Made by a program: the position numbers and the translations under genes
Virus record (IMG/VR): IMGVR_UViG_3300034072_000926
Span: 124,001 to 188,000 of that record
DNA: 64,000 nt
Direction: 5' to 3' (one strand)
In this document: piece by piece, positions 19,763 through 33,197 of the stretch
Layout: the number at the start of each line of letters is the position of its first letter
Numbering within the stretch: the first letter of the stretch is position 1
The notes under the pieces: generated by a model
The model's input: the letters and a program-made list of their open reading frames with translations, nothing else
What the model was told of the DNA's origin: nothing
Database searches by the model: none

Positions 19763-19775
19763 TCAAATTTTTCGA

Positions 19776-20240
19776 TTATTCATTTGCTATCTTGAGATAT
19801 ACCGCTTCGCTCTGTAACCCTAGTGCTCTAATTTCGAGCGGAGTAAGATTCTTGATCTTATCTTGTCGAATCTCAGTCAGCATTTCTTCAGATGGATCAA
19901 CGTCAGTGATTGTAATATCAGTTGTTATCACAATCCTAATATCCACCCAGTCTATAGAGACTAACGATTTTTTCTGAAAACTAGAATATCTATGTTGATC
20001 TTCAAAAAAATTCCTTGCCTCGCTGAGGATTTGTGCTTCCTCCTTAGGAGTTAAATTCGGCAGGCTTTTAGCATAATTTGGCACTGAAATGAATTTCATT
20101 TCAGTCCCTACTTTACGCTTACCTGATATTACATCGTGATAGCCATAAAAATAGGATATAGATTTAGAAACATTGTCGTTATAATCAACAACCCGTTCTA
20201 CAGCCTTCAAAGTTCTAATGTCTGTGGTTTCAACTGCCAT
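19776..20240 (-). CDS. Hypothetical protein (KLTxxEIRALG C-terminal motif)
   Basis: 154 aa AT-rich ORF with GGAG RBS. Confidence 0.65.
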   Translation of the reverse strand: MAVETTDIRTLKAVERVVDYNDNVSKSISYFYGYHDVISGKRKVGTEMKFISVPNYAKSLPNLTPKEEAQILSEARNFFEDQHRYSSFQKKSLVSIDWVDIRIVITTDITITDVDPSEEMLTEIRQDKIKNLTPLEIRALGLQSEAVYLKIANE

Positions 20241-20344
20241 TTCAATTACTCCTTAAGCAATGTCATAGCAGTTGAAATTTTTAGGAATCAATAAGTAAAT
20301 CGGATAGAGGCCCGTGTGTAACTGATTGACACCTAGCCGGAGTT

Positions 20345-20575
20345 TTAGCCAGCAGTCTGGTCGTTATCCGGTGTAACGTCTTTGCGGGCCTCTATCTGCT
20401 CTACCATCCACTTTGTGGAATGCTCAGCTGAGCAAAAGTCCAATCGCACGACCGTGTATGGATTGATCTTCGGGTTTGCCCAATAGAGCGGCTCCCCGTG
20501 TTCTCCCTTGAGAAACTTGTCATCGTTCAACGACATTGCACAAACATGACAACGATGGCCACCGAGAAAATTCAC
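20345..20575 (-). CDS. Small hypothetical protein with a CxxC motif
   Basis: 76 aa ORF containing CHVC and FCSAEH. Confidence 0.5.
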   Translation of the reverse strand: MNFLGGHRCHVCAMSLNDDKFLKGEHGEPLYWANPKINPYTVVRLDFCSAEHSTKWMVEQIEARKDVTPDNDQTAG

Positions 20576-20644
20576 GCCGAAAAACCTTTATTGACGTTTT
20601 GACCTGCTAATCGTTACAGGTTGGCTGAAGAAAGGTCAAGGGCT

Positions 20645-21037
20645 ATGGAAAATTCAGAGGTTACGAAACTGGTCATCTGTTTCAAAGATGAGGACGATGA
20701 CTTTGCCTATATCACGCATGTGTATATAGACGGCAATGACGAATATCAGACAACCAACTGTTATGATTTCGAAGATGCGCTCGATCTATCTCCCTATTCT
20801 CAGACCGAATTGGTCAAGATCTATCGAAGTTTCTTCGAGACCTACGGTGATGACTACGATTGCGAAATCGTCAATATCACAAAGACGATCAAAATCGCTC
20901 CTTACGAAACCGAAGATGATACTATCAAGGAACTGACTCAGAAGCACGCCTTGTCGAAGCTAACCGAGCGTGAGATTCGCGCCCTTGGCATCGTGAATAT
21001 TGCAACCTACATCAAAACAAAGTTCCACAACGCTTGA
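20645..21037 (+). CDS. Hypothetical protein (KLTxxEIRALG motif)
   Basis: Follows a TTGACG promoter; C-terminus is similar to the 19776-20240 product. Confidence 0.65.
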   Translation: MENSEVTKLVICFKDEDDDFAYITHVYIDGNDEYQTTNCYDFEDALDLSPYSQTELVKIYRSFFETYGDDYDCEIVNITKTIKIAPYETEDDTIKELTQKHALSKLTEREIRALGIVNIATYIKTKFHNA

Positions 21038-21067
21038 CACGCAGGGTAAACCTGTTACGGAGTTCCT

Positions 21068-21661
21068 ATGGCAGAGATGAAAGTTTTCAAGGTCAAGAAC
21101 CTCAAGACAGGCGAGTTCAGGACAGCCGGCGGTGGTTGGTCTAAGTTCGGCAAGACCTGGAACAACCTCGGACACTTGAAAGCCAGTCTCGCAACCACAT
21201 GGTGGTATCGTGAGGATTCCGAAGAGGCTATCAAAGCGCGTAAGAATTACGCGATTATCGAGATTGTCATTGTCGAGTCAGAAGACAACGTGACTCCGAT
21301 GGACGATTTTGTTGATAAGCTGAAAAGAGCTGCCAAGCTACGTGAACAATACGGTCGTAGCTTTACTGACCTTGTTGAGCGGATTGAGAAGGACGGTCAG
21401 TCTAAGGATTGGCAATGGGTTCTCATTATCCCACAGAACAATCGTCATCCCGAATATCGCCAAGAGATGCTCGACTATATTAAGAGTCAGAAGCTCAAGT
21501 TGGGCAAGGATGTTCGTAAAGCTGATGCAGACCAGGGAGGGATTGCAGTAGCTTTCAAGGAAAAGAAGCACGCCATGGCTATTAAACTGGCTATGGAAAC
21601 TGAGTCAGGTTTGGTCGGAATTGATATCCAGACTTTCATGGAAACAAATCTTGACGAATAA
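21068..21661 (+). CDS. Hypothetical protein, paralog of 33197-33784
   Basis: GGAG RBS and TTGACA promoter; shares KVxKxxNxxT...GKxWxN...IxEI with 33197-33784. Confidence 0.7.
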   Translation: MAEMKVFKVKNLKTGEFRTAGGGWSKFGKTWNNLGHLKASLATTWWYREDSEEAIKARKNYAIIEIVIVESEDNVTPMDDFVDKLKRAAKLREQYGRSFTDLVERIEKDGQSKDWQWVLIIPQNNRHPEYRQEMLDYIKSQKLKLGKDVRKADADQGGIAVAFKEKKHAMAIKLAMETESGLVGIDIQTFMETNLDE

Positions 21662-21694
21662 GGAAGACTCCGTATATAAGTAGATGTATAGCAA

Positions 21695-21751
21695 GGGTGG
21701 ATCGCAAGGTCGCACCCAAGCTGAACCATAAAATCCTATCGAAAGGTAAGG
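21695..21751 (+). promoter_or_regulatory. Structured leader upstream of nadE
   Basis: GGGTG-GATC-GCAA-GGTC-G-CACCC and CCT-ATC-GAAA-GGT-A-AGG; both have GNRA loops, and the second covers the RBS. Confidence 0.45.
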
Positions 21752-21754
21752 TGC

Positions 21755-23530
21755 ATGATGAGCAAGCATAAGTTCGCAGTCGTTCAATTCAATCCCATCG
21801 TCGGTGACCTTGAAGGTAATTTCCTCGGTCACATTTCCAATATCGAAGAAGCTGTTGCGCAAGGCGCGAAGATGGTCATCTTCCCCGAAATGTCGCTGAC
21901 CGGCTACCCTCTGGAAGATCTTGTTCTCCGGCGCTCGTTTGTTGAGGCCGTTGAGGACTACATCGCAAAGCTGGTCGTGACGATTAACGAACGCTGGCCA
22001 GATATTGCCGTGATCTTCGGCGCACCAACGATCAATCATCACGACGATGAAGTATTCCAAGTTCACAACAGCGCATTCTACGTCTACAAGTCGGAGACCG
22101 CAGACGTTATCGACAAATACGAACTGCCCAACTACGGCGTGTTCGACGAGAAGCGCGTTTTCAAAAGCGGCGAAGCCAAGGGCGGAATCATCGAATTTGA
22201 GGGTTATCGCATCGGTCTCATGATCTGCGAAGACTGCTGGTTCCCCCGCGTGAGCGAAAGTCTTCTCGACCAACGAGCAGTGATGCTTCTGAGCATTAAC
22301 GGTTCGCCCTATGAAATGGGCAAGAACGTTGTGCGTCGTCAGGTCATCGCAAAGCGCATCAAGGAAACTGGTCTGCCCTTCATGTATGTCAACATGGTCG
22401 GCGGTCAGGACGAACTCGTGTTTGATGGCGGATCGTTCTACTATGATGGAGAGACGGTCCAAGAAGCACCTCACTTCAAAGCTGGCATCACATATATGGA
22501 TGTCACGCTGAACCTGCGCGGGCGCGGCGGAGATCATCACACCGGCTACACCTACGATTGGTCGCTGACCACTGACAACTATCCTAAGGTCGACGCCAGC
22601 GGAGTCAAGGAAGTCTACCAGGCGATACACATGGGTCTTAAGGACTACATGGGCAAGCAAAAGAATGCTCAAGGTGTCCCAGTATTCAGTCGTGCAGTCC
22701 TGGGTTATTCCGGTGGTGTCGACTCGGGCATTGTTGCTGCGGTCGCGTGTGACGCGCTCGGTCCGGAAAATGTCCATCTGGTCCGTCTGCCCAGCAAGTT
22801 CTCGTCGGCTGGTTCGCTAACTGACGCAGAAGATGGTGCAATGCGTCTCGGAGCGCCCATGCGCACCATTCGTATCGAGCCGGTCGTGGATGCGCTTCGT
22901 CAAGCATATTGGGGCGCACAAGGTGGATGCAATTTCTACACCTATCGCAACAGTCAGCTCACTGGTGTAGCGGATGAGAATATCCAGGCGCGAGCACGTG
23001 GTAACATTCTGATGGCAATCAGCAATCAGGAAGGTCATATGCTTCTGACCACCGGCAATAAGTCGGAAGTCAGTGTCGGCTATTCGACCCTATATGGTGA
23101 CATGAGTGGCGGATACAATCCGATCAAGGATGCCTATAAGACCACTGTTTGGGAATTGTGCCGCTGGCGCAATGGTCTGACCCAGGAGGAACTCGACGAA
23201 CTGGGCTTCTCGGGTCGTGCAACTGAAGTTGTTCCGGAGGCAATCATCAGCAAGCCGCCGAGCGCAGAACTCCGTGCTGACCAGAAGGATAGCGACAGCC
23301 TTCCCGAATATCCTGTTCTCGATGCAATCCTTAAGGGGATGATTGAACAGGAGAAGAGCATCCGCACCCTCATCGAGGAAGGATTCAACGAAGCCGAGGT
23401 AACCAGAGTTCGGAATCTGGTTGACAATGCGGAATATAAGCGTAGACAGGCAGCACCGGGTGTCAAGCTTACGAGCAAGATTCACGGGCGCGATCGGCGC
23501 TACCCGATTGTCAATGCTTGGAGGGCTTAA
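21755..23530 (+). CDS. nadE: Glutamine-dependent NAD+ synthetase
   Basis: Nitrilase-type domain with E-K-C triad (FPEMSLTGY, DKYELPNYGVFDE, ICEDCW); synthetase motifs SGGVDS, ENIQARARG, TGNKSE, GYSTLYGD. Confidence 0.97.
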   Translation: MMSKHKFAVVQFNPIVGDLEGNFLGHISNIEEAVAQGAKMVIFPEMSLTGYPLEDLVLRRSFVEAVEDYIAKLVVTINERWPDIAVIFGAPTINHHDDEVFQVHNSAFYVYKSETADVIDKYELPNYGVFDEKRVFKSGEAKGGIIEFEGYRIGLMICEDCWFPRVSESLLDQRAVMLLSINGSPYEMGKNVVRRQVIAKRIKETGLPFMYVNMVGGQDELVFDGGSFYYDGETVQEAPHFKAGITYMDVTLNLRGRGGDHHTGYTYDWSLTTDNYPKVDASGVKEVYQAIHMGLKDYMGKQKNAQGVPVFSRAVLGYSGGVDSGIVAAVACDALGPENVHLVRLPSKFSSAGSLTDAEDGAMRLGAPMRTIRIEPVVDALRQAYWGAQGGCNFYTYRNSQLTGVADENIQARARGNILMAISNQEGHMLLTTGNKSEVSVGYSTLYGDMSGGYNPIKDAYKTTVWELCRWRNGLTQEELDELGFSGRATEVVPEAIISKPPSAELRADQKDSDSLPEYPVLDAILKGMIEQEKSIRTLIEEGFNEAEVTRVRNLVDNAEYKRRQAAPGVKLTSKIHGRDRRYPIVNAWRA

Positions 23531-23532
23531 TA

Positions 23533-24846
23533 ATGGTCGATATCGCACTTCGCGCTCATAATAAGAACTGGCGCCTCGATCCCATCATTCGGTCACTCCT
23601 CGATACCGATTTCTACAAACTCATGATGGGGCAGTTCATCTGGGAACGCTATCCTATCCACATCGTGACGTTCGGCATGAAAAACCGAACCAAGTCCATC
23701 AATCTCGGCAAGGTCATTGACGAGCAGGAACTTCGCGCACAACTCGATCACGTGATGTCGCTAAGCTTCACCAACAAAGAGCTCATCTGGCTGCAGGGTA
23801 ATACCTTCTACGGCCAGGAACGGATCTTCAAGCCCGGCTTCATCGAGTTTCTGCGTCGTCTGAAACTGCCACCCTATACTCTGACCCGTGACGAGAATGA
23901 CGACTATGTCCTTCGATTCACCGGCCAGTGGATGCAGGTCACGTTCTGGGAAATCTACGCGCTCTCGATTGTGAGCGAACTGAAGACCCGTGCGGCGCTG
24001 GCAAAGCTGAGCAAGTTCGAACTGGACGTCCTCTACGCAAATGCCAAGGCAAAGCTTTGGAAGAAGCTGAAGGCAATCAAGGAAGCCGGCGTTCGTGGGC
24101 TGTCGGATATGGCAACTCGCCGTCGTCATTCCTTCCTCTGGCAGCGTTGGTGTGTTGAAGCCGCGAAGGAAATCCTCGGCGATGCCTTCTTGGGCACGAG
24201 CAATGCCTATCTCGCGATGGAACTCGACCTCGAAGCAATCGGCACGAATGCACATGAACTGCCGATGACCCTCGCGGCGATCAAGGCCGGCCAGGGCGGC
24301 TCGGACGAGGACATTCGTAATGTCCAATACGAGGTCCTCAAGGGCTGGCAGAACCAGTATTCGGGCAATGTGTTGGTTGCGCTGCCTGATACTTTCGGCA
24401 CGACGCAGTTCCTCAAGGATGCTCCGCAATGGGTTGCCAACTGGAGGGGCTTCCGTCCGGACTCGAAGGCTCCTGACGAAGCGACCGAAGAGCTGATTGC
24501 ATTCTGGAAGCGTATGGGAGTCGATCCGGCAAAGAAGCTGGTCCTCTACAGCGATGGTCTGGACGTCGATGAAATCATCCGCATCTGGAACAAGTGGAAT
24601 GGTATCGTGACGGTCGGCTTCGGCTGGGGCACGATGTTTGCAAATGATTTCATCGGCTGCGATCCCACTGAAAGCAATCTGCTCGATCCAATCTCGATCG
24701 TTTGCAAGGTCATTGAAGCCGATGGTCACCCGGCCGTGAAGCTGTCAGACAACTATACCAAGGCAACTGGCGCTGAGGAAGAAGTCGATTATTATCGACG
24801 CATCTTCGGACATGAGGGCATGAAGGATGCCCCGGTGTTCGTGTAA
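23533..24846 (+). CDS. pncB: Nicotinate phosphoribosyltransferase
   Basis: SLLDTDFYKL, DMATRRRHS, GTSNAY, GTNAHE, LPDTFGT, RPDS, YSDGLD, FGWGT, AVKLSDN. Confidence 0.95.
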   Translation: MVDIALRAHNKNWRLDPIIRSLLDTDFYKLMMGQFIWERYPIHIVTFGMKNRTKSINLGKVIDEQELRAQLDHVMSLSFTNKELIWLQGNTFYGQERIFKPGFIEFLRRLKLPPYTLTRDENDDYVLRFTGQWMQVTFWEIYALSIVSELKTRAALAKLSKFELDVLYANAKAKLWKKLKAIKEAGVRGLSDMATRRRHSFLWQRWCVEAAKEILGDAFLGTSNAYLAMELDLEAIGTNAHELPMTLAAIKAGQGGSDEDIRNVQYEVLKGWQNQYSGNVLVALPDTFGTTQFLKDAPQWVANWRGFRPDSKAPDEATEELIAFWKRMGVDPAKKLVLYSDGLDVDEIIRIWNKWNGIVTVGFGWGTMFANDFIGCDPTESNLLDPISIVCKVIEADGHPAVKLSDNYTKATGAEEEVDYYRRIFGHEGMKDAPVFV

Positions 24847-25160
24847 TGGGCATCAAAGACCATAGTGGGACTTGGAGACCAAGTTGCCCGACTGGCAATG
24901 CGCTGGATGATTTCCTCTATTCTTCAAGAAAGGAGCCGAAGGTGGCGAACGTAGAAGTCAAGGTCGAGAAGACCTTCAATTTCACTGAAGAAGCCATCCG
25001 GCAGATCCTTTCGGAGTATCTCGCCGAAAAGCATTCCATCAATGTGGATCCCAGTGCTTTCAAAATGAAGATCACTGATTCCTCATATGGTGGCTATCGG
25101 GAAGATCAGTTCATTCCAGCAAAGCTGGATGGCTTCAGCGTGACGGTGACCAGCGTATGA
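24846..25160 (+). CDS. Hypothetical protein (true start possibly a GTG near 24941)
   Basis: ORF in the operon; AAGGAG precedes an internal GTG. Confidence 0.55.
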   Translation: MGIKDHSGTWRPSCPTGNALDDFLYSSRKEPKVANVEVKVEKTFNFTEEAIRQILSEYLAEKHSINVDPSAFKMKITDSSYGGYREDQFIPAKLDGFSVTVTSV

Positions 25161-25378
25161 AAGGCAAACACCTCGTATTCCGTATTTGGAACGATACCCA
25201 GATGTGGTATTGTGGTCGAACTTCCGGCCTGCGAGGTGGAACCTGGCCTGAAGAATGGACGCCAGACAAGACGACAGCGACCTGGCTCACCCAGAAACAA
25301 GCCAAGCGATTGATTGACGCACAACGTCATCAATTGTTCACTTGTGGTGCTGAGCCCTCATTTACGATTGTTTACTGA
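25157..25378 (+). CDS. Hypothetical protein
   Basis: 73 aa ORF, ATGA-coupled. Confidence 0.55.
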   Translation: MKGKHLVFRIWNDTQMWYCGRTSGLRGGTWPEEWTPDKTTATWLTQKQAKRLIDAQRHQLFTCGAEPSFTIVY

Positions 25379-25719
25379 TGGGCACTTCTAATCCACGCTA
25401 CAGTTGCTCTAGCCCGACCTGTAATGCGAAGATCACTCGCAATCAGCTACGTGGCAGCAATGGTATCTGCATCTACTGTAAGACCCCTATGAAGCACACT
25501 AGCTGGATGGGCGGACAACAGGCAACACTTGGTCAGCTTCTAACTATTCCAAAGTCCGAAGAGGCTGAGTTGAAAACACTTGCCGAAACTGTCGGGTTGG
25601 AAACGAAAGATCTTATCTCAGCAGCAATCGTCCTCAAGCTAAAAGAATGGTTGGCTGCGGAAAATGTTGAAAAAGCAGTGAAGCAGGACTTAATGCTTGA
25701 GAAACTATCAAGGAGTTAA
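25378..25719 (+). CDS. Hypothetical protein with a putative zinc ribbon
   Basis: CSSPTC...CIYC motif; coupled start. Confidence 0.55.
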   Translation: MGTSNPRYSCSSPTCNAKITRNQLRGSNGICIYCKTPMKHTSWMGGQQATLGQLLTIPKSEEAELKTLAETVGLETKDLISAAIVLKLKEWLAAENVEKAVKQDLMLEKLSRS

Positions 25720-25721
25720 TC

Positions 25722-25898
25722 ATGTATAAGGTCATCGGTGGAGTTTACACCAACACTGAATTTTCAGAGCTTGAACAGGGCACCCAGGAGTGCTATGGAC
25801 CGTTTAACACATACGAGGAAGCATACTCGGCGTGGAACGGTGCAACATGGGCTAAGGTAGATAATTGCTGCCATCGCCTACAGATTATGGAGATATAA
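25722..25898 (+). CDS. DUF4170-like small protein (not in the ORF track)
   Basis: Translated by hand: MYKVIGGVYTNTEFSELEQGTQECYGPFNTYEEAYSAWNGATWAKVDNCCHRLQIMEI, with AAGGAG RBS. Confidence 0.7.
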   Translation: MYKVIGGVYTNTEFSELEQGTQECYGPFNTYEEAYSAWNGATWAKVDNCCHRLQIMEI

Positions 25899-26536
25899 TG
25901 GCTTACTGTTATCCGTTTCGCATGGCAAGTGGCACCGCTACGATGCTTCCTATCGACGCAAAGAACAATCGTGTGCTTCTCGGCGTTCGCTCAAAGACCG
26001 CTTGGGTCTATCCCAGCAAGCTGAGCCTGGCCGGTGGCTTCATGGAAGCCCGCTTTGTCAAGGAACAGGATACGGACTTAATGTCTCAGGCACGCCAGTT
26101 CGTCATGAAGCTGATGGGCTGGAAGCTGGTCGCTGACGAATATGCCGAAGGCGAGAATCTCGAAGAGTGTGCTGTTCGTGAACTCGGTGAGGAAATGCTC
26201 ATCGACGTTGCAATCGAGCAGCTCAAGATGTTCACGGTGCGTTCCAACTGTCGCACCGATACCCGCGCGCATGTGATCAATGCCTGTTATTGGTTCGAGC
26301 TGACTGACGAGCAGATTGCTGCCGCGACTGCCGGCGATGACCTCGAAGAACTTGTCTGGGTTAATATCGACGAATTCGATATTGAACTGCCCTACGCTGC
26401 CCTTGAGGCAAAGTGGGACATGGCGTTCAATCACTTCGAAGTCATGCTCCAGGGCATTGCCGACTGGCGCAAGGAAAAGAACTATGAGCGACTGGTTCGT
26501 CTGGAACAGGACCTGAAAGCCCGAGAGGTGATCTAA
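25898..26536 (+). CDS. Nudix hydrolase, ADP-ribose pyrophosphatase/NrtR-like
   Basis: LAGGFME...GENLEECAVRELGEE Nudix box and RTDTRAHVINACY. Start overlaps the upstream TAA. Confidence 0.85.
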   Translation: MAYCYPFRMASGTATMLPIDAKNNRVLLGVRSKTAWVYPSKLSLAGGFMEARFVKEQDTDLMSQARQFVMKLMGWKLVADEYAEGENLEECAVRELGEEMLIDVAIEQLKMFTVRSNCRTDTRAHVINACYWFELTDEQIAAATAGDDLEELVWVNIDEFDIELPYAALEAKWDMAFNHFEVMLQGIADWRKEKNYERLVRLEQDLKAREVI

Positions 26537-27142
26537 ATGGCAAGACGTGTAGCCATGGCAGCGATGCGGACACAGCCTATTCATTTGGGCCATACCGCAA
26601 TCGCGAATGCAATGACTGCCAACTTTGACGAAGTGATCATCTTCAACGGGTCGGCAGACAAGCCAATCAGCATCTCAAATCCATTCCCTGTCGAGATCCG
26701 AATCCAAATGTGGAAGAGGATCTTCGGGGATCGTATCAAGCTCGTTCCGGTATCTGATCTCGGCGCGACCACTGACACTACGGAATGGTGCGACTATCTG
26801 TTGAAGAAAGCCAAGCAATTGGGTTTGCCTGAGCCAACAGATTATTTCACCGGCTCACCTGCTGATGCGGTCTGGTATCGCGGTCGTTTCTTCAACAAGG
26901 AATGCAATTCACCGGCCGATGATGACACTGACGAGTTCATTGCTCGTTACATGCCAAATGGCGTGTTCAGGCAGCTTCATCTAGTCGACCGGACGCAGAA
27001 CTACATTCCCAGCGCGACCGAACTACGTCAGTTCATGGTCACGCGAGATGATGGTTGGAAACGCTGGGTTCCAACCGTCATACATGACTTAGTTGAAGAG
27101 CACTTTCCAGAAGAATTCAAGGTTAAGCACCGCGACGTCTAG
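26537..27142 (+). CDS. NMN/NaMN adenylyltransferase, NadM-like
   Basis: RTQPIHLGH (HxGH), [21 protein letters not shown] motifs. Confidence 0.8.
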   Translation: MARRVAMAAMRTQPIHLGHTAIANAMTANFDEVIIFNGSADKPISISNPFPVEIRIQMWKRIFGDRIKLVPVSDLGATTDTTEWCDYLLKKAKQLGLPEPTDYFTGSPADAVWYRGRFFNKECNSPADDDTDEFIARYMPNGVFRQLHLVDRTQNYIPSATELRQFMVTRDDGWKRWVPTVIHDLVEEHFPEEFKVKHRDV

Positions 27143-27665
27143 TTTCCCATGCCTTTTTATTGCGGGCCGACCTCTCTTCTTTAGAGAAGTTGGCCCAAGC
27201 AGTCTTCTGCTTGTCTGACATATCTTTCTTTGTTTCTTCGGTATGTTTAAGACCAAGTCGATGACTTTTCTCACCAGGCTTATGTGGGTTATTTGTTCGC
27301 ATACGTTCTTTAACTACTGAACTTGCAGGACGGCCTTTTGCTGACGGTGGATTAGCATCAATACATAGATTTGTAAGAATGCCATCTTTATCAAACTTCC
27401 TGCGACCGTATTTTATAATCTCTTGTCGTTCTAATTGACAGGCTTCCTCATTTTCTAAGTTCTCAAAAACTTTAACAATCGAGGGTTCAAAGCCAGCCTC
27501 TCGGATTTTAGAAATTACATTATCCTTAAAAGGGTTCTCGTTTCTATTTCGACCAGTTAGATGCTCATTTGCCCTATTGCCTTTACCTTTTCCAACATAG
27601 AATACTGTGTCAGTTCTAGGATCAATTAAATGATAGACGTAAAATACATTTGAAATCTTTGTCAT
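27123..27665 (-). mobile_element. Free-standing GIY-YIG homing endonuclease with NUMOD3-like repeats
   Basis: FYVYHLIDPR...FYVGKG...R..EH and KHTEETKKDMS motifs; AT-rich and antisense to the operon. Confidence 0.85.
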
Positions 27666-27703
27666 ATCTAACTATACATTGGAAACGATCGAAAGGACAA
27701 TTT

Positions 27704-27967
27704 ATGGGCGACATGGGCGAACTGTTCAATGATCTTAAGGATCTGCGAAAGGAACAGAGAGCGGCTCGGTCAACGCAAGCTGGCGCAATGTTCGATGATG
27801 TTGCAAAGATGGTCGATAAGATTTCGGTCGATCCGAGTGGCACATGGAACATTGTGAAGCGGGACAATAAGATTCAGTTCTATCCCACAAAGGGAACATG
27901 GCAACACCGAGGAAGGATGTTGCGTGGAGGGATTCATTCCTTTATGAACTGGCTTGAGAAACTGTAA
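27704..27967 (+). CDS. Hypothetical protein
   Basis: AAAGGA RBS before MGDMGELF. Confidence 0.65.
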   Translation: MGDMGELFNDLKDLRKEQRAARSTQAGAMFDDVAKMVDKISVDPSGTWNIVKRDNKIQFYPTKGTWQHRGRMLRGGIHSFMNWLEKL

Positions 27968-27976
27968 GAGGGAAAT

Positions 27977-28447
27977 ATGACCGCAATCATTCAGACCATC
28001 GAATCCGTCGAAGCATACGGCGAGAATCTCTCGATTGTGACCACGAGCGAAGGCAACAAGGTCATCGCCAACAAAAAGGAAGACGGATCATTCCGTTGGA
28101 CTGCTGGTGAACTCGTCGCTTACGTCAGCGAAGGTTCTATCCTTCCTGAGGATGTGCTCAAGGATCGCGGATACTGGGACACTGAAAAGAACCGCGGTCT
28201 TCTCGATGGCGGTCCTCGCAATCGTGTGAAGATGAAGAAGCTCGCTGGGTTCGAATCGCGCGGTCTTCTTTTCAAGGTCGATTCGCATAAAGTCATCGAA
28301 AATGCCGGCGAAGAAGGTCGCTTCATAGATGCGGTCATTCGGTATGACCATCACGAGGATGGCATGCGCTCCGTTGGAGACATCCAAGAGGTAAAGGTCG
28401 GCGACGACGTCTCGGAGTTCTTCGGTATCACGGAGTTCCAGGGATGA
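27977..28447 (+). CDS. Stand-alone N-terminal domain of a DRB0094-family RNA ligase-like protein
   Basis: GELVAYVSEGSILP, RVKMKKLAGFESRGLLF and GDDVSEFFGI resemble GDLxVYFEIDSxIP, RLRTxKLRGxxSQGLLL and GDDVTExLGI. Confidence 0.55.
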   Translation: MTAIIQTIESVEAYGENLSIVTTSEGNKVIANKKEDGSFRWTAGELVAYVSEGSILPEDVLKDRGYWDTEKNRGLLDGGPRNRVKMKKLAGFESRGLLFKVDSHKVIENAGEEGRFIDAVIRYDHHEDGMRSVGDIQEVKVGDDVSEFFGITEFQG

Positions 28448-28710
28448 TCACCTTCGATGATTGGTGTCGAGATGTTCGCTCGAAATATGAGCAACAATTC
28501 GGCATCAAGCCAGCAGCCGCTCCGAATCTTGTCAATCTATCAAGCATCATTCAGGAACGGATGATGCGTTGTGGATTGGAAGCTCGTGCATTCCAACTTG
28601 ATGATGATAGGGATACTATCGCGATCCTTGCCCATCACACATTGCTGTATGATGACATCAAGACTCGTAAAGGTGTGAATGATCCTTCCCGCCTCTACGG
28701 CGTAGGTTGA
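28444..28710 (+). CDS. Hypothetical protein
   Basis: 88 aa ORF, ATGA-coupled. Confidence 0.55.
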   Translation: MITFDDWCRDVRSKYEQQFGIKPAAAPNLVNLSSIIQERMMRCGLEARAFQLDDDRDTIAILAHHTLLYDDIKTRKGVNDPSRLYGVG

Positions 28711-28782
28711 CACAACTGCCAACCTGTCGTATTATAAGATAAATAGGGATGGTGGTTAATCGACTGGTTGAATCACCATCCC
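28708..28782 (+). promoter_or_regulatory. Promoters plus hairpin upstream of pncA
   Basis: TTGACA-17-TATTAT, TAAATA at 28740-28745, and the stem GGGATGGTG/CACCATCCC at 28746-28782. Confidence 0.5.
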
Positions 28783-28810
28783 ATGAACCTCAATGAAAGT
28801 TGGAGGCAAT

Positions 28811-29413
28811 ATGAAAAAGTTCCTTGTCGTTATCGACACACAATATGACTTCGTTATGCCAAAGGGTGCCCTCTATGTGAAGGGCGCAGAGAACATCATT
28901 CTCCCCGGCATCGACTTCCTCGCAAATCTGAACCCCGACGAATATTGTGGTGTTCTGTTCACCTACGACACTCATACGCCGTCGGTTTACGAGGGTTCGC
29001 CCGAAAGCGAACAATTCCCCATTCACTGTGTGAAGAGGACGTTCGGCTGGACCAACGTCTTCAACGACCAAATCATCCACAAGAACATTCCAGTGTCGCG
29101 TCTCGACAAAGGTGTGTTCAATATGTGGGAAGAAGCTGATCTGCGTATGGAACGCTTTGATCGTTCCACTTCTATTATCCGTCCAGTTATTGACATGCTG
29201 GTCCGAGACGACTTTTTCCTCGATCTGGCCAGCAAGGACGTTGAAATCGAAATCTTCGGCGTAGCTTCCGACTATTGCGTGAAGTGGGCGGTTGATGGTT
29301 TCGTGAAGCGTGGCTTCAAGGTCAAGGTCATCGACGAACTGTGCCGTGGCATCATGCAGACGGCTCAGGAAACTTTCGATGCTCCTGAATATGTAACGGT
29401 CGAGGTCGTGTAA
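28811..29413 (+). CDS. pncA: Nicotinamidase (isochorismatase family)
   Basis: VVIDTQYDF (Asp), TYDTH and IHC (metal ligands), DKG (Lys), GVASDYCV (Cys); GGAGG RBS. Confidence 0.92.
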   Translation: MKKFLVVIDTQYDFVMPKGALYVKGAENIILPGIDFLANLNPDEYCGVLFTYDTHTPSVYEGSPESEQFPIHCVKRTFGWTNVFNDQIIHKNIPVSRLDKGVFNMWEEADLRMERFDRSTSIIRPVIDMLVRDDFFLDLASKDVEIEIFGVASDYCVKWAVDGFVKRGFKVKVIDELCRGIMQTAQETFDAPEYVTVEVV

Positions 29414-29871
29414 TGGGCAAGATCATCACAAGCCCAGAACCAGTTAGTCATCCGTTCCAAAAGGCGATCTTCCTCGCAGGCGGTATCTCGAACTGCCCTG
29501 ACTGGCAGACCCCTGTCGCCGAACGTATCGCAGCAGAGACTGACGCCGTGGTCTATAATCCACGCCGGCTCGACTTCGATATGTCGGCGTATGAAGAAAT
29601 CTCTCGCCAGCAGATCATTTGGGAATGGCATGCCTTGAGGACTGCGGCATTCAATCTCTTTTGGTTCCCCGAAGAGACACTCTGCCCAATCACGCTACTG
29701 GAATATGGGTCGGCTATGGAACGCTTGCGTCCCGGTGCTCTTATGTGCGGAACTCATCCGAACTATCAGCGTCGCTTCGATATCATCGAGCAAGCCAAGC
29801 TCAAGCAACACGATCCAATATACGATAGTCTCGAGACTCTTGTGGACCAAACGATCGCAATGCTCAAATAA
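29413..29871 (+). CDS. Nucleoside 2-deoxyribosyltransferase-like protein
   Basis: IFLAGGI, DWQ, NPRR, QIIWEWHAL, LFWFP, CPITLLEYG; coupled to pncA. Confidence 0.8.
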   Translation: MGKIITSPEPVSHPFQKAIFLAGGISNCPDWQTPVAERIAAETDAVVYNPRRLDFDMSAYEEISRQQIIWEWHALRTAAFNLFWFPEETLCPITLLEYGSAMERLRPGALMCGTHPNYQRRFDIIEQAKLKQHDPIYDSLETLVDQTIAMLK

Positions 29872-29878
29872 ATAATGG

Positions 29879-30484
29879 GTGCGACTTTACGAGATACAAG
29901 GCTTCGGCTATTGCCCGAATGATGACCTTCTACTTGAAGGGTGGATGGATAGTGTCAAAAAGGCACTAGGTGGAAAAGTTGATCAAGCTGTAACGGTTGT
30001 CAACAATACTGCATCTGCTCTTCAGGTGTTTTACAAGATCGGCACAAATCCCGAATATCTTGATACAGTGGTGTTCCTGATCAAGAAAGACATCAAGCAA
30101 AAGCTCAAAGCTCTTGGCAATGGTCCTATCATGACTAAGTTTCGTGAATTTGTGGACAAAATCTTTCCTGCTGGTCGCAAGCTTCTAGACTTCGTCAAAT
30201 GCTGCATCATTTGCGCTGCTCTCAAATTTGTCGGTGGATTGGTTGAGAAATTCAATACCGCAAAGAAAGTCGGCGGACAAATGCTTGATCAGATCAAAGA
30301 CCAAGCCCAAGATGTTGTCGGAGAACTGTTGCAGAAGATGACCGGCCTTGATACCATGGTTAATGGATTAACTCAAGCTAGTGGTGTATTTGCAATTCTC
30401 AAAGGTCTTGGAATTGCAAATGAGCTGTTGTTCGAACTCCTCACCAATGTGAACAAGAAAATTCAGAGCGTAAGAGTCGGTTGA
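29879..30484 (+). CDS. Hypothetical late protein
   Basis: TAAATA at 29869-29874; begins MRLYEI. Confidence 0.65.
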   Translation: MRLYEIQGFGYCPNDDLLLEGWMDSVKKALGGKVDQAVTVVNNTASALQVFYKIGTNPEYLDTVVFLIKKDIKQKLKALGNGPIMTKFREFVDKIFPAGRKLLDFVKCCIICAALKFVGGLVEKFNTAKKVGGQMLDQIKDQAQDVVGELLQKMTGLDTMVNGLTQASGVFAILKGLGIANELLFELLTNVNKKIQSVRVG

Positions 30485-30528
30485 CATTTCTCCTCAACCT
30501 GCTAGACAGGTGTTGAAAGGAGCAACCG

Positions 30529-31185
30529 ATGACTCATCCAAGCAAATATCCGTCCAGTCCACATTGGATCGCTTCTCCCGAAGTTCATCGGGATGATTCC
30601 ACTCATCAGGATCCTGAGTTCTTTGTAGGACGGGAAGTCGTGATCACTGAGAAGCTTGATGGCGGGAATACCTGTCTCAACGCTGGCGAAGTCTATGCAC
30701 GATCGACCGGACAGCCCGCAACACAAGGTTGGTTTGCAATGGTCAAGAAGCATCATGCTTGGCGGACCATCCATATCGACCCACGTATCGCGATCTACGG
30801 GGAAGATCTCTACGGCATCCATTCTATCGTCTATGACGCCCTTAAGGAAGAAGAGACCTATCGGGTCTTCAATATCCGTGAAGGGGACGAGTGGTTGTCC
30901 TTGGACGAGAAGATTGCATTCTGTGAAGAACATGAATTCATGATGGTTCCTGTTCTCTTCCGAGGCGTCTTCGATAGCGTTGATGAGATCACAAAGTGGT
31001 TTGACGCTCATATCAAGGAACCGAGTGCTCTCGGGCCGGATCGCGAAGGCTTCGTGATGCAAATCACCGATCGCTTTCATAATGACGCTTTTGCTCGGTC
31101 TGTTGCAAAGTATGTCCGAAAAGGGCATGTTCAGACTGATGAACATTGGACCCGCAACTGGAAGCCTGCCTCTCTTTTGAAGTAG
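30529..31185 (+). CDS. RNA ligase (nucleotidyltransferase domain only)
   Basis: ITEKLDGGN (motif I, KxDG), IYGE, VFNI, EGFV, AKYV. Confidence 0.88.
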   Translation: MTHPSKYPSSPHWIASPEVHRDDSTHQDPEFFVGREVVITEKLDGGNTCLNAGEVYARSTGQPATQGWFAMVKKHHAWRTIHIDPRIAIYGEDLYGIHSIVYDALKEEETYRVFNIREGDEWLSLDEKIAFCEEHEFMMVPVLFRGVFDSVDEITKWFDAHIKEPSALGPDREGFVMQITDRFHNDAFARSVAKYVRKGHVQTDEHWTRNWKPASLLK

Positions 31186-31204
31186 GCTTCCCAAAGGGAA
31201 GTTT

Positions 31205-31699
31205 ATGTTCAAGCAAGGCTCGTTCTACGCAATCCAAGGCAAGACTAAAATGGGAAGCACGGTCTTCCTAGAGAGTGTCATTGCCTCCGACAATCACCAA
31301 GAGCGTCTACGCGCTATTGCCAAGAGGGCTGCTCGCTTCAGTAGCTCTTACGAAGAGGACGTCATCAGTCCTCTCATTCCAATCAAATCGTCGGCCAATC
31401 CCTTTGAAGTGAAAGTCTGGGATTCCAATGTGGATATCAAGATTATCATTTCTATGATGCGTATGATTCGCAAGAATGCGAGTGATGCTGACGTTGATCC
31501 CAACAGCCTGAAGATTGTAGTCGTCGAAACAAGTGTTGAAGCCTATATTCCCGAAAGTCCAAGTGACGAAGAAACCGAACTTCGTCGTTATGTGCTGGAA
31601 AAGCTCAGCGATGAAGAGAAGAAACTCCTGAATGTGACACACTGGGAAGTCTACGGGAAGCTTGCTGATCGTTCCATGTTGGACGACGAAGAATCCTAA
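31205..31699 (+). CDS. Hypothetical protein (KLSDEEKKLL motif)
   Basis: 164 aa ORF; the RBS lies in the GGCTTCCC-AAA-GGGAAGTT hairpin. Confidence 0.65.
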   Translation: MFKQGSFYAIQGKTKMGSTVFLESVIASDNHQERLRAIAKRAARFSSSYEEDVISPLIPIKSSANPFEVKVWDSNVDIKIIISMMRMIRKNASDADVDPNSLKIVVVETSVEAYIPESPSDEETELRRYVLEKLSDEEKKLLNVTHWEVYGKLADRSMLDDEES

Positions 31700-31708
31700 A
31701 AGGTTGAC

Positions 31709-32719
31709 GTGATGGATATTGACATTATTAAGGGTTTGATTAAGAACAAATCACCGAAGGCGAAATTTGTGGCTAAAAAGAGTGTAGCAGACGTTATGCC
31801 CAAAAAGGGCAATGAACTACAATCCAACGCCGCCACTCCTAATCGTATCAATACCTTCGCTGAAACAATGACTCAGTTGAAGGTGTCTCAGGAAATCAAA
31901 ATTCCTCGAGCTCCATCAGAACCTATTCTCAGGATGCCTCAAATCCAGCCGTTGTATAAGACGCTGGGAGAAAAGATGAACATCTGTCCCTACGAACTTA
32001 GGGACATTCTGACTCACGACTACACTGAGGAAAATGAGATTGCTCTCAGTCTACTTAAGAAATTCGTAGTCGCAGTAAAGCTCAGCGGGACGGTCGATTT
32101 CTCGAATAGTCGGGAGAACATCCGTCTTTCTGAGGAGAGGTTCAAGAACGAGACCGAATGGCAGAAACAAGAGGTCGAGAAGATCAACAATCTTGCTGCC
32201 GAGAAGGAACAAAAGATCAAGACAGGTTCGGCAGAGCTTCGAAAGATCTGGCATGATATCTTGATTGATCTTGTCACCAAGCTTCAGCGCAATCAAAACA
32301 TCAACGACCTTGGCACTCTTGACTACTGGTTGGTCAAAGCCCTTAAGGCTAAGAGCTCTAAATATGTTAAAGTTGATCGCCAGCATCAAGTGACCATCGA
32401 CTACCAGAAATGTAAGTCTATTACGTCCGACGGCGTTCAACAGCTATTCAAAGATATGTCCACTATGCGTGAAAGCCATGCGGCCCACACGTTGCGTAGC
32501 GAGCTTCACAGGGCATCTGACGATAAGTTGGAAATGCTGGCTCGGATGTATCAGGATGAGAAAGATCCTCGTCTTGCATTCGTCCTTGAAGAGATTGATG
32601 ACCGTGATGACAGGACTCGTCGCATCAACTGGAACGATCCCTATAGCGAGTGGCGCGAGCAAAGTCGTTATGACAAATATGCAAAGCTGGTCGACATGCT
32701 TCGTGACCTAGGCGAGTAA
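31709..32719 (+). CDS. Hypothetical coiled-coil protein
   Basis: 336 aa ORF. Confidence 0.65.
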   Translation: MMDIDIIKGLIKNKSPKAKFVAKKSVADVMPKKGNELQSNAATPNRINTFAETMTQLKVSQEIKIPRAPSEPILRMPQIQPLYKTLGEKMNICPYELRDILTHDYTEENEIALSLLKKFVVAVKLSGTVDFSNSRENIRLSEERFKNETEWQKQEVEKINNLAAEKEQKIKTGSAELRKIWHDILIDLVTKLQRNQNINDLGTLDYWLVKALKAKSSKYVKVDRQHQVTIDYQKCKSITSDGVQQLFKDMSTMRESHAAHTLRSELHRASDDKLEMLARMYQDEKDPRLAFVLEEIDDRDDRTRRINWNDPYSEWREQSRYDKYAKLVDMLRDLGE

Positions 32720-32786
32720 GAATATAGACTAACCTGCTTCCACCGCTTTACGACTTACAAGAAGGTTTACCTCTTGGAGTTGTAAA

Positions 32787-33197
32787 GTGTCCGAAGAAAA
32801 CAATAATGAGGAAGAAAAGCAGACCGCGAAGGACGAGCTAGAAGCAGCATCGATCAACGGGATTGCGTATATCCTCACACACCTCGCCGATCATTATGGC
32901 AATAATATCCCCGATGATATCGAACTCAACAATGTCTTTCTTCGGGTCTTCTCAAATCTAACTGGTGAAATGCTGGCCCATTATCCTGAGGACATTCGGG
33001 ACGATGTGTTCAGCAACATGATTTCCGATATCCAGCAGATTATGGATGTAGCAGTCGTCGAACTTGCCGAACTAGCAGAACTCGAAGAAACACTCGTCGA
33101 AGCTGAAGAATCTGACGTTCAGACTCTCGCTGACACTATCTTGCGCGGCTCCAATCCCCTTGATCTTTCGAAGCTGAAGCCAAAGGGCAACTGCTGA
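32787..33197 (+). CDS. Acidic hypothetical protein
   Basis: 136 aa ORF with GGAG RBS. Confidence 0.65.
   Translation: MSEENNNEEEKQTAKDELEAASINGIAYILTHLADHYGNNIPDDIELNNVFLRVFSNLTGEMLAHYPEDIRDDVFSNMISDIQQIMDVAVVELAELAELEETLVEAEESDVQTLADTILRGSNPLDLSKLKPKGNC

What the first reader, a model, noticed from the sequence alone, without database searches (positions are those of the whole stretch)
21755..29871. Complete deamidating NAD+ rebuilding pathway (PncA-PncB-NadM-like-NadE plus Nudix): a candidate third phage NAD reconstitution system
Seen: five co-oriented genes within 8 kb, all with intact catalytic motifs: nicotinamidase, nicotinate PRTase, HxGH adenylyltransferase, glutamine-dependent NAD synthetase and an ADPR-type Nudix. 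Known: TIR/SIR2 anti-phage effectors cleave NAD+ to nicotinamide plus ADP-ribose, and the described phage countermeasures are NARP1 (Adps + Namat) and NARP2 (Nampt + Nmnat), which do not pass through nicotinate. Inference: this phage can recycle both products: Nam to Na (PncA), ADPR to ribose-5-P (Nudix), Na + PRPP to NaMN (PncB), then NaAD (NadM-like) and NAD+ (NadE). I know of no characterisation of this route as anti-defence. No PRPP synthetase is in the window, so PRPP would come from the host or elsewhere in the genome.
Basis: partly seen in the sequence, partly recalled or inferred. Interest (0 to 1): 0.88.

Follow-up and report, generated by a model that had tools for sequence, protein, structure and literature searches.

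The report
Phage deamidating NAD+ salvage gene module
A giant phage carries a conserved set of genes (nicotinamidase, nicotinate phosphoribosyltransferase, NadM-type adenylyltransferase, NAD synthetase, ADP-ribose-type Nudix) that can rebuild NAD+ from nicotinamide by way of nicotinate; the set recurs in unrelated phages, is a good untested candidate for a further counter-measure against NAD+-destroying bacterial defences, but it is not the "third" such pathway and its core was already noted in jumbo phages.

Summary
The window is a 64-kb piece of a 465-kb jumbo myophage contig, related to Agrobacterium phage Atu_ph07 and Sinorhizobium phage Phosso. On the + strand between 21755 and 29413 it carries five NAD genes:
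- a two-domain glutamine-type NadE
- PncB
- a Nudix whose fold is closest to the ADP-ribose pyrophosphatase domain of NadM
- a divergent NadM-type adenylyltransferase
- a divergent but motif-complete nicotinamidase

It is a PF15891 nucleoside-deoxyribosyltransferase-like protein.

The set is under selection as a unit. About 15 distinct related genomes keep it while swapping parts for non-orthologous equivalents: one- versus two-domain NadE, phage-type versus canonical PncA, split versus fused NadM-Nudix. An unrelated human-gut phage has the same five functions with NadD in place of NadM. No locus holding the phage-type PncA has Nampt within 10 kb.

The pathway logic is sound, and NadM working with NadE has cellular precedents. 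However, NARP3 already exists (PnuC-NadR), pncB-nadD-nadE clusters in jumbo phages were published in 2024, and the cultured relatives also carry PnuC-NadR. The anti-defence role and the NaMN/NMN order are untested.

The parts
21755..23530 (+). NadE: two-domain (type F) glutamine-dependent NAD+ synthetase, 591 aa
   Evidence: NF010588 scores 635 bits against a cut-off of 479. Pfam finds CN_hydrolase and NAD_synthase. The best PDB hits are 3N05, 4F4H and 5KHA at 1e-118 to 1e-125. The glutaminase Glu/Lys/Cys positions are conserved and SGGVDS sits at residue 319. In most relatives this slot holds a single-domain NadE of about 330 aa instead.
23533..24846 (+). PncB: nicotinate phosphoribosyltransferase. 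The ORF opens at TTG 23518; the likely start is ATG 23533, 3 nt after the NadE stop.
   Evidence: NF003704 scores 437 bits against a cut-off of 379. Pfam finds NAPRTase_N and NAPRTase, and there is no hit to the Nampt model NF006629. It is 73-78% identical in nine IMG/VR relatives and 54-57% identical in Atu_ph07 and Phosso. The junction was read directly.
24846..25898 (+). Four small ORFs (104, 73, 113 and 58 aa) of unknown function, joined to their neighbours by overlapping or abutting stop and start codons
   Evidence: ORF list and junctions. No family hit for the two ORFs scanned. The 113-aa and 58-aa ORFs are conserved at this place in relatives. Whether they belong to the pathway is unknown.
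25898..26536 (+). Nudix hydrolase, 212 aa, of the clade of the NadM-linked ADP-ribose pyrophosphatase domain, with about 33 residues inserted inside the Nudix box
   Evidence: Pfam NUDIX 43 bits. The AF2 model has pLDDT 90. The best Foldseek PDB matches are 2FML, 2QJT/2R5W/2QJO (NadM-ADPRase) and 3GZ8 (NrtR with ADP-ribose). G46 G47 F48 E50 ... G85 E86 x7 R94 E95 x2 E98 E99 are invariant in 38 homologues.
26537..27142 (+). NadM-type (archaeal-like) pyridine-mononucleotide adenylyltransferase, 201 aa, of a divergent phage subfamily
   Evidence: NF002243 scores 53 bits, below the cut-off of 127. A family profile hits 1F9A at 1e-14 and NadM-Nudix 2QJO at 5e-9, and no NadD. The AF2 model has pLDDT 93 and its 16 best PDB fold matches are all NadM-type NMNATs. 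R11, H16, G18, H19, T161, E162 and R164 are invariant.
28707..28735 (+). Sigma-70-like promoter match (TTGACA, 17 nt spacer, TATTAT; 11 of 12) in the 82-nt gap upstream of PncA
   Evidence: This is the only 11/12 match in 19500-33500. The total count of matches is not above the shuffle expectation, so it is a hint only.
28793..29413 (+). PncA-like nicotinamidase, 206 aa (phage-type; PHROG 19305, listed as 'unknown function')
   Evidence: Pfam Isochorismatase scores 20.7 bits and NF008623 45 bits, both below their cut-offs. PHROG 19305 hits at 6e-32. The nine best PDB sequence hits are nicotinamidases or pyrazinamidases, led by yeast Pnc1 2H0R at 1e-11; one of the nine is deposited under a generic name. 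The Asp, Lys and Cys triad and the Asp/His/His ligands are conserved. In L003 and L018 the same slot holds a canonical PncA above the NF008623 cut-off.
29413..29871 (+). PF15891 nucleoside 2-deoxyribosyltransferase-like protein, 152 aa. Its start overlaps the PncA stop (TAATG).
   Evidence: Pfam PF15891 62 bits. The only PDB sequence hit is the uncharacterised 4MCJ. It is conserved right after PncA in most relatives, but it is absent in L004 and separated from PncA in L005 and Phosso. Structural neighbours of an Atlas cluster representative from the same family, not of this protein's own model, include fusions to Metallophos or Nudix domains and, more distantly, TIR and DUF4062 domains.

Best explanation
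The cluster is a functional, phage-encoded deamidating NAD+ salvage module.

Proposed steps:
1. PncA hydrolyses nicotinamide to nicotinate plus ammonia.
2. PncB joins nicotinate to host-made PRPP to give NaMN.
3. The NadM-type enzyme adenylylates NaMN to NaAD.
4. The two-domain NadE amidates NaAD to NAD+ using glutamine.
5. The Nudix, which is of the type fused to NadM in bacteria, splits ADP-ribose into AMP and ribose-5-phosphate. That removes ADPR and can feed host PRPP synthesis.

The module therefore takes both products of NAD+ cleavage back to NAD+. Its most likely benefit is to hold up the NAD+ pool during infection, including in hosts whose TIR or SIR2 defences deplete NAD+. It would work like NARP2, with Nampt replaced by PncA + PncB + NadE.

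Shown here: the gene identities, the conserved catalytic residues, the folds, and conservation of the set with part-swapping. Inferred: every substrate, the order of steps 3 and 4, the expression timing and the anti-defence effect.
For: **Identities.**

**The set is conserved as a unit.**
- All the long loci fetched with PncB or with Nudix homologues keep the order NadE-PncB-Nudix-NadM-...-PncA: L003, L004, L005, L009, L011, L014, L018, L019 and Phosso.
- A profile scan with the phage-type PncA gave 20 loci, 19 of them informative. In all 19 a NadM-type adenylyltransferase lies nearby, 17 have PncB, and 15 have NadE within 10 kb.

**Non-orthologous replacement inside fixed slots argues for selection on function.**
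- NadE is two-domain in the window, L004, L014, L036 and Atu_ph07. It is a single-domain form, only 26-31% identical, elsewhere.
- PncA is phage-type in most loci and canonical in L003 and L018, about 20% identical, with the same catalytic residues.
- NadM and Nudix are split and divergent here. In L036 and L037 they form a canonical fused NadM-Nudix next to PncB-PncA.

**Independent assembly.** The unrelated human-gut phage MT835470 has PncA-PncB-NadE-AAA-NadD-Nudix, with the classical NaMN adenylyltransferase at the step filled here by NadM.

**Alternative to Nampt.**
- The same Nudix family sits with a canonical NadM and Nampt in T4-like contigs L015 and L017, which have no PncA, PncB or NadE locally.
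- No PncA locus has Nampt within 10 kb.

**Cellular precedents.** Archaeal NadM uses both NMN and NaMN, and in Acinetobacter NadM works with a two-domain NadE (PMC3376133).

**Operon structure.** The genes from NadE to NadM have overlapping or abutting stop and start codons.

**Anti-defence precedent.** NARP2 and NARP3 show that phage NAD+ salvage counters NADase defences.
Against: - No experiment bears on this route. No study of it as anti-defence turned up in the library I searched.
- The NadM-like, PncA-like and Nudix proteins fall below the curated HMM cut-offs, so their substrates are inferred from motifs, folds and context.
- The Foldseek margin between ADPRase-type and other Nudix structures is small: 1.8e-8 against about 1e-6. 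In addition, the Nudix box is interrupted and its last Gly is replaced.
- In one search, NadM is described as a family that, unlike NadD, can effectively use NMN.
- The route costs more ATP than NARP1 or NARP2 and needs host Prs.
- One lineage (L041-L045) lacks a detectable Nudix. Atu_ph07 has the genes dispersed.
- The cultured relatives also carry PnuC-NadR, so this module need not be the anti-defence one.
- Only 64 kb of the 465-kb genome was visible.
Confidence: 0.6

Rival explanations
1. The enzymes are the same, but the purpose is housekeeping. On this view the module is an auxiliary metabolic set that raises or recycles NAD+ for the large phage's own needs. Those needs could be NAD+-consuming phage enzymes, redox demand over a long infection, or use of environmental nicotinate. 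It would not be a specific answer to NADase defences.
For: - The 2024 survey read such clusters as metabolic complementation of the host (PMC11662467).
- The module sits among structural and RNA-repair genes, not in a recognisable anti-defence island.
- The relatives carry a second NAD system, PnuC-NadR, so redundancy or general supply is plausible.
- The Atu_ph07 paper treats these genes as nucleotide metabolism.
Against: - PncA and an ADPR-type Nudix, which handle exactly the two products of NAD+ cleavage, were recruited in two independent lineages.
- The analogous Nampt-NadM and PnuC-NadR sets were shown to be counter-defences.
- The two readings are not exclusive.
Confidence: 0.27
2. The parts are the same but the order follows the Francisella-type route. 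NadE would act as an NMN synthetase (NaMN -> NMN), and the NadM-type enzyme would then adenylylate NMN to NAD+. NaAD would never be formed.
For: - In one search, NadM is described as able, unlike NadD, to use NMN effectively. In Francisella, replacement of NadD by NadM goes with a NadE that amidates NaMN (PMC3376133).
- The cluster has no NadD.
- Most relatives carry a single-domain NadE. Francisella 3FIU is among its top PDB hits, fourth at 4e-17.
Against: - The window's NadE is a conventional two-domain enzyme, closest to the Streptomyces, Burkholderia and Acinetobacter enzymes. In Acinetobacter that type works on NaAD together with NadM.
- The archaeal single-domain NadE tested had no NMN synthetase activity.
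- The phage single-domain NadEs are no closer to Francisella than to ordinary NadEs.
- The gut-phage version uses NadD, which implies NaAD.
Confidence: 0.15
3. The Nudix, and possibly the PF15891 protein, is not an ADPR recycler. It could instead trim NAD(H) levels, remove NAD caps from RNA, or destroy ADPR-derived immune signals. The carbon of ADPR would then not return to NAD+ by this module.
For: - The Nudix box is atypical.
- The fold match to ADPRases is only marginally better than to other Nudix enzymes.
- The 2022 survey states that the Nudix domain of NadM regulates NAD+ by cleaving it (PMC9503650).
- One lineage lacks the Nudix.
- PF15891 shares its fold class with TIR and DUF4062 NADase domains and is fused to Nudix or phosphoesterase domains in other phages.
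Against: - The nearest structures are the ADP-ribose pyrophosphatase domains of NadM and the ADPR-binding NrtR.
- This Nudix family travels with NAD salvage genes of both kinds.
- Fused NadM-Nudix proteins occupy the same position in L036 and L037.
Confidence: 0.2

Closest known systems
NARP2 (Nampt + Nmnat; Vibrio phage KVP40 NadV/NatV type)
   Same: It starts from nicotinamide and PRPP and ends with a NadM-type adenylyltransferase accompanied by an ADPR-type Nudix. The same phage Nudix family is found next to Nampt and NadM in contigs L015 and L017. NARP2 is a proven counter to NAD+ depletion.
   Different: There is no Nampt in the window. The phosphoribosyltransferase is PncB, above the NF003704 cut-off and with no Nampt-model hit. 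The route needs a nicotinamidase before it and an amidating NadE after it. The adenylyltransferase is only 17-20% identical to the NadM of the Nampt loci.
Preiss-Handler clusters of 'NAD-jumbo phages' (pncB-nadD-nadE; Microbiome 2024, PMC11662467)
   Same: These are phage-encoded, physically clustered PncB + adenylyltransferase + NadE sets, found mostly in jumbo phages and predicted bioinformatically.
   Different: That report starts from nicotinate, uses NadD, and reads the clusters as metabolic complementation. Here a nicotinamidase and an ADPR-type Nudix are part of the conserved set and NadM replaces NadD. Together these connect the pathway to the two products of NADase defences. The gut phage MT835470 bridges the two, with NadD plus PncA plus Nudix.
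Cellular NadM-based NAD networks (Archaea; Acinetobacter; Francisella)
   Same: NadD is absent and NadM is present together with NadE. Acinetobacter pairs NadM with a two-domain NadE, Archaea pair it with a single-domain NadE, and both pairings occur among these phages.
   Different: The phage NadM-like protein is a divergent subfamily with its own invariant insertion (T101-D-Y-x-T-G-S ... W113-Y). Its NMN/NaMN preference is unknown. The Nudix is a separate gene placed upstream rather than fused downstream.
NARP3 (PnuC + NadR; PMC13464706)
   Same: It is a phage NAD+ salvage set that restores NAD+ depleted by Sir2-HerA. The cultured relatives Atu_ph07 and Phosso carry it as well as the present module.
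   Different: It imports nicotinamide riboside and does not recycle intracellular nicotinamide or ADPR. Neither PnuC nor NadR is in the window, and a pattern scan did not find NadR on this contig, although that is a weak test.
NARP1 (Adps + Namat)
   Same: It uses both cleavage products, ADPR and nicotinamide, to rebuild NAD+.
   Different: NARP1 rejoins them directly through ADPR-pyrophosphate in two steps. Here ADPR would be broken down to ribose-5-phosphate and rebuilt through host Prs. No Prs-like or Namat-like gene is in the window.

Membership tests
NARP2 | Nampt (NadV) nicotinamide phosphoribosyltransferase | tested here: not met
   The only phosphoribosyltransferase is PncB (NF003704, 437 bits against a cut-off of 379), and it does not hit the Nampt model that the L015 protein hits at 470 bits. 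No other ORF of 250 aa or more in the window matches NAPRTase or NAMPT families. The rest of the genome was not visible.
NARP2 | NMN adenylyltransferase (NadM type, often with Nudix) | tested here: met
   NadM-type fold and catalytic residues, with an adjacent Nudix of the NadM-ADPRase clade.
NARP1 | Adps (Prs-like ADPR pyrophosphokinase) and Namat | tested here: not met
   No Prs-like or second phosphoribosyltransferase-like ORF appeared in the Pfam, NCBIfam or PHROG scans of window ORFs. This covers the window only.
NARP3 | PnuC transporter plus bifunctional NadR | tested here: not met
   Neither is in the window (same scans). A NadR profile scan of IMG/VR did not return this contig, which is a weak test. 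Relatives Atu_ph07 and Phosso have both genes elsewhere.
Preiss-Handler pathway (PncB, NadD, NadE) | PncB and NadE present | tested here: met
   Both score above the curated NCBIfam cut-offs.
Preiss-Handler pathway (PncB, NadD, NadE) | NadD-family NaMN adenylyltransferase | tested here: not met
   The adenylyltransferase matches NadM and archaeal NMNAT, not NadD. NadD is present in the analogous gut-phage cluster. Whether NadM accepts NaMN cannot be tested here.
Nicotinamidase (PncA, isochorismatase-like cysteine hydrolase) | Asp-Lys-Cys catalytic triad and Asp/His/His metal site | tested here: met
   Alignments to yeast Pnc1 and M. tuberculosis PncA and to canonical phage-borne PncA show all the positions conserved. 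These lie in the DTQYDF, YDTH, FPIHC, DKG and SDYCV motifs.
Nicotinamidase (PncA, isochorismatase-like cysteine hydrolase) | Score above curated family threshold | tested here: not met
   Pfam scores 20.7 bits against 27, and NF008623 scores 45 against 174. The assignment rests on motifs, PDB hits and slot replacement by a canonical PncA.
NadM-type NMN/NaMN adenylyltransferase | GRxQPxHxGH and SxTxxR motifs with catalytic Arg/His | tested here: met
   R11, P14, H16, G18, H19, T161, E162 and R164 are invariant in 29 homologues. These are the residues mutated in the archaeal NMNAT entries that top the fold search (R11, H19, R136).
NadM-type NMN/NaMN adenylyltransferase | Substrate: NMN and/or NaMN | not testable with these tools
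   Only the precedent that archaeal NadM uses both substrates (PMC3376133).
ADP-ribose pyrophosphatase (Nudix, NadM-linked clade) | Nudix box catalytic residues and fold closest to ADPRase domains | tested here: inconclusive
   The RE..EE residues are invariant, but the box carries a 33-residue insertion and lacks the final Gly. The top fold matches are NadM-ADPRase and NrtR, by a small margin. Substrate not tested.
Glutamine-dependent NAD+ synthetase (type F) | Nitrilase-like glutaminase domain with Glu-Lys-Cys plus synthetase domain with SGGxDS | tested here: met

The most novel reading that the evidence does not exclude
The set PncA + PncB + adenylyltransferase (NadM or NadD) + NadE + ADPR-type Nudix may be a genuine further NAD+ reconstitution pathway of phages, a deamidating one. 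It would have been assembled independently at least twice from non-orthologous parts and would serve as the alternative to Nampt on the same NadM/Nudix chassis. When expressed, it would restore NAD+ and phage growth in cells armed with TIR or SIR2 NADase defences. A further possibility is that the PF15891 protein coupled to PncA is a new accessory enzyme of this pathway.
Probability: 0.45. Interest if true: 0.72.

Novelty: new variant of a known kind. Interest (0 to 1): 0.6.

Why it matters
NAD+ depletion is one of the commonest effector strategies of bacterial immunity, and three phage pathways that rebuild NAD+ are known. A fourth, running through nicotinate, would have several consequences:
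- It would show that phages can draw on the deamidating salvage branch as well as the amidated routes already known.
- It would explain why NadM and Nudix genes occur in phages without Nampt nearby. An earlier survey held that every NadM-carrying phage also has NadV (PMC9503650).
- It would give annotation pipelines a name for PHROG 19305, currently 'unknown function': phage nicotinamidase.
- It is directly testable, because a cultured phage (Sinorhizobium phage Phosso) carries the whole cluster.

The mosaic replacement of parts is also a clean natural experiment for assigning function to divergent enzymes.

Tried and rejected
- **Near-identical DNA in the phage collection:** none found. The nearest isolates share only about 50% protein identity.
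- **tRNAs in the window:** none.
- **Reading 29413-29871 as the Nudix or as part of the five:** rejected. It is a PF15891 protein.
- **The 492-aa ORF 59697-61175 as a hidden Nampt:** no family hit in Pfam or NCBIfam.
- **The second HIGH-type nucleotidyltransferase, 59162-59743, as the missing NadD:** no NCBIfam or PDB support. It belongs to a broad phage family with varied fusions. Left open.
- **Deciding NaAD-first versus NMN-first from sequence:** the PDB neighbours of both NadE types are uninformative.
- **Structure papers on NadM, Acinetobacter and KVP40:** not held in the library.
- **NadR on the window's contig:** a single-protein scan and a profile scan returned only other contigs. This is not proof of absence.
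- **Promoter and terminator scan:** counts were not above shuffles. Only one strong promoter-like site stood out.
- **Chance clustering:** rejected on conservation.

Full report
**What the window is**

The window lies on IMG/VR contig UViG_3300034072_000926, which is 465,259 bp long. It encodes a T4-like major capsid protein, prohead protease, portal, tail sheath, tail tube and baseplate proteins. There is no near-identical DNA in the phage collection. The closest isolates are Sinorhizobium phage Phosso (469 kb) and Agrobacterium phage Atu_ph07 (490 kb), with about 52% identity in the tail sheath. The finding therefore sits in a jumbo myophage of that group.

**Checking the observation**

On the + strand I find the following genes.
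- NadE, 21755-23530. It has two domains. NF010588 scores 635 bits against a cut-off of 479, and the glutaminase triad positions and an SGGVDS loop are present.
- PncB. The ORF starts at 23518 and the likely ATG is 23533, three bases after the NadE stop. NF003704 scores 437 against 379, and the Nampt model is not hit.
- Four small unknown ORFs.
- A Nudix, 25898-26536.
- A NadM-like adenylyltransferase, 26537-27142.
- A nicotinamidase-like protein, 28793-29413.

The last three score below the curated HMM cut-offs, so I tested them further.
- **Nicotinamidase.** The nine best PDB sequence hits are nicotinamidases or pyrazinamidases, one of them deposited under a generic name. The Asp-Lys-Cys triad and the Asp/His/His metal ligands are conserved.
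- **Adenylyltransferase.** A profile of 29 homologues hits archaeal NMNAT at 1e-14 and bifunctional NadM at 5e-9, with no NadD hit. An AF2 model (pLDDT 93) has NadM-type NMNATs as its 16 best PDB fold matches. The catalytic Arg and His residues are invariant.
- **Nudix.** The AF2 model (pLDDT 90) is closest to an NrtR-like protein, to the ADP-ribose pyrophosphatase domains of Francisella and Synechocystis NadM, and to NrtR bound to ADP-ribose. The margin over other Nudix folds is small.

It is a PF15891 nucleoside-deoxyribosyltransferase-like protein whose start overlaps the PncA stop.

The five genes are also interrupted. Besides the four small ORFs, a minus-strand GIY-YIG homing endonuclease (27123-27665) and an RNA-ligase-N-terminal-like gene lie between them. 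No Prs or Nampt is in the window.

**Conservation**

PncB relatives in IMG/VR are 73-78% identical, and every long locus keeps the same order: NadE, PncB, Nudix, NadM, PncA. More distant genomes found through Nudix homologues do the same (L014, L018, L019). So does the cultured phage Phosso, where the cluster is annotated except that the nicotinamidase is called 'hydrolase'. Atu_ph07 has all five genes, but dispersed.

A profile scan with the phage-type PncA returned 20 loci. Of the 19 informative loci, all have a NadM-type gene next to or near PncA, 17 have PncB, and 15 have NadE within 10 kb. None has Nampt.

**Part-swapping**

The slots are kept while the occupants change.
- NadE is two-domain in the window, L004, L014, L036 and Atu_ph07. 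Elsewhere it is a single-domain enzyme of about 330 aa, only 26-31% identical.
- PncA is the phage type in most loci. In L003 and L018 it is a canonical PncA above the NF008623 cut-off, about 20% identical but with the same catalytic residues.
- In L036 and L037 a canonical fused NadM-Nudix sits directly upstream of PncB-PncA (2QJO at 1e-49 and 2e-62).
- The unrelated human-gut phage MT835470 has PncA, PncB, single-domain NadE, an AAA protein, a NadD-like adenylyltransferase (NF000840 at 1.6e-25) and a Nudix, in a row.
- The same Nudix family, with its unusual insertion of about 33 residues inside the Nudix box, sits with a canonical NadM and Nampt in two T4-like contigs. Those contigs have no PncA, PncB or NadE nearby.

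I read this as one functional module with two interchangeable front ends. One is Nampt alone, the NARP2 type. The other is PncA + PncB + NadE, the deamidating type.

**Mechanism**

The best-supported route is:
1. nicotinamide to nicotinate (PncA)
2. nicotinate to NaMN (PncB, with host PRPP)
3. NaMN to NaAD (NadM-like)
4. NaAD to NAD+ (NadE, with glutamine)

The Nudix would hydrolyse ADPR.

Step 3 has precedents. Archaeal NadM is reported to use both NMN and NaMN, and in Acinetobacter NadM works with a two-domain NadE (PMC3376133). The gut-phage cluster uses NadD at this step.

The alternative order is NaMN to NMN by NadE, then NMN to NAD+ by NadM, as in Francisella. It cannot be excluded, and PDB neighbours do not discriminate.

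The genes from NadE to NadM are packed with overlapping or abutting stop and start codons. A single strong sigma-70-like site precedes PncA.

All substrates and the anti-defence effect are inferred.

**Comparison with what is known**

- NARP1 is Adps + Namat and NARP2 is Nampt + Nmnat.
- NARP3 is PnuC + NadR and was published in August 2026. The label 'third' is therefore taken.
- A 2024 survey reported jumbo phages with complete Preiss-Handler clusters (pncB-nadD-nadE) and read them as metabolic complementation.
- A 2022 survey listed only NadV, NadM and NadR as phage NAD+ synthesis enzymes. It stated that every NadM phage also has NadV. The loci here show NadM paired with PncB instead, at least locally.
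- I found no paper naming a phage nicotinamidase or testing this route against defences.
- The cultured relatives also carry PnuC-NadR, so the systems are not mutually exclusive at genome level.

**Verdict**

It is best filed as a new variant of the known kind 'phage NAD+ salvage/reconstitution'. It is most like NARP2 in logic and most like the archaeal or Acinetobacter NadM-NadE network in parts. It is a well-founded, directly testable candidate and not yet a demonstrated anti-defence system.

**Limits of this study**

- Only 64 kb of the genome was visible.

Noticed in passing
window 27123-27665 (- strand): This is a GIY-YIG (LEM-3-like) homing endonuclease gene on the opposite strand, overlapping the 3' end of the NadM-like gene by 20 nt. 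Relatives lack it at this site, and homologues sit elsewhere in L009 and L011. It looks like a recent mobile insertion into the operon.
   Followed up: partly
window 27977-28447 and 30529-31185 (+): An RNA ligase appears to be encoded in two separate genes. A 156-aa protein matches only the N-terminal part of DRB0094-type ligases, and a 218-aa protein holds the PF09414 nucleotidyltransferase domain. PncA, the PF15891 gene and other ORFs lie between them. The split arrangement is conserved in relatives.
   Followed up: partly
window 25898-26536 and alignment A1: All 38 aligned members of this phage Nudix family carry an insertion of about 33 residues, modelled as a helix, between the GGFME strand and the GE-x7-RE-x2-EE helix of the Nudix box. 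They also lack the final Gly of the box. The family is found next to both Nampt-type and PncB-type NAD genes.
   Followed up: partly
window 59162-59743 (+), with overlapping 492-aa ORF 59697-61175: This is a second HIGH-superfamily nucleotidyltransferase, with a TKGH motif in place of HxGH and a VSATAAR second motif. It has no NCBIfam or PDB sequence hit and belongs to a broad phage family with many fusion partners. The following 492-aa ORF has no family hit at all.
   Followed up: partly
L005 14835-15338: A related phage contig carries a full ribosome recycling factor gene inserted between PncA and the PF15891 gene (frr: TIGR00496 at 151 bits, above its cut-off; Pfam RRF at 7e-50).
   Followed up: no
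window 29879-30484 (+): This 201-aa ORF has no homologue at this position in any related locus and no family hit. It seems to be an insertion specific to this phage.
   Followed up: no
window 53758-54630 (-): A radical SAM protein with weak similarity to RlmN/Cfr rRNA methyltransferases (65 bits, far below the cut-off). It lies next to Rad50-like (54623-56407) and Mre11-like (56791-57819) genes.
   Followed up: no
window 34360-34866 (+): A phage-encoded outer-membrane beta-barrel protein (PF13505, 63 bits). It is conserved at the same place in L014, L018 and L019.
   Followed up: no
window 24841-24852 and 29408-29419: The same 12-mer, GTGTAATGGGCA, forms the overlapping stop/start junction both at PncB/next ORF and at PncA/PF15891. 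This could be coincidence or a shared coupling signal.
   Followed up: no
L020 35810-37762 (Atu_ph07) and L022 4258-6213 (Phosso): Both cultured relatives carry a PnuC transporter next to a NadR-type enzyme, the NARP3 gene pair, far from the deamidating cluster. These jumbo phages therefore hold at least two NAD+ systems.
   Followed up: partly
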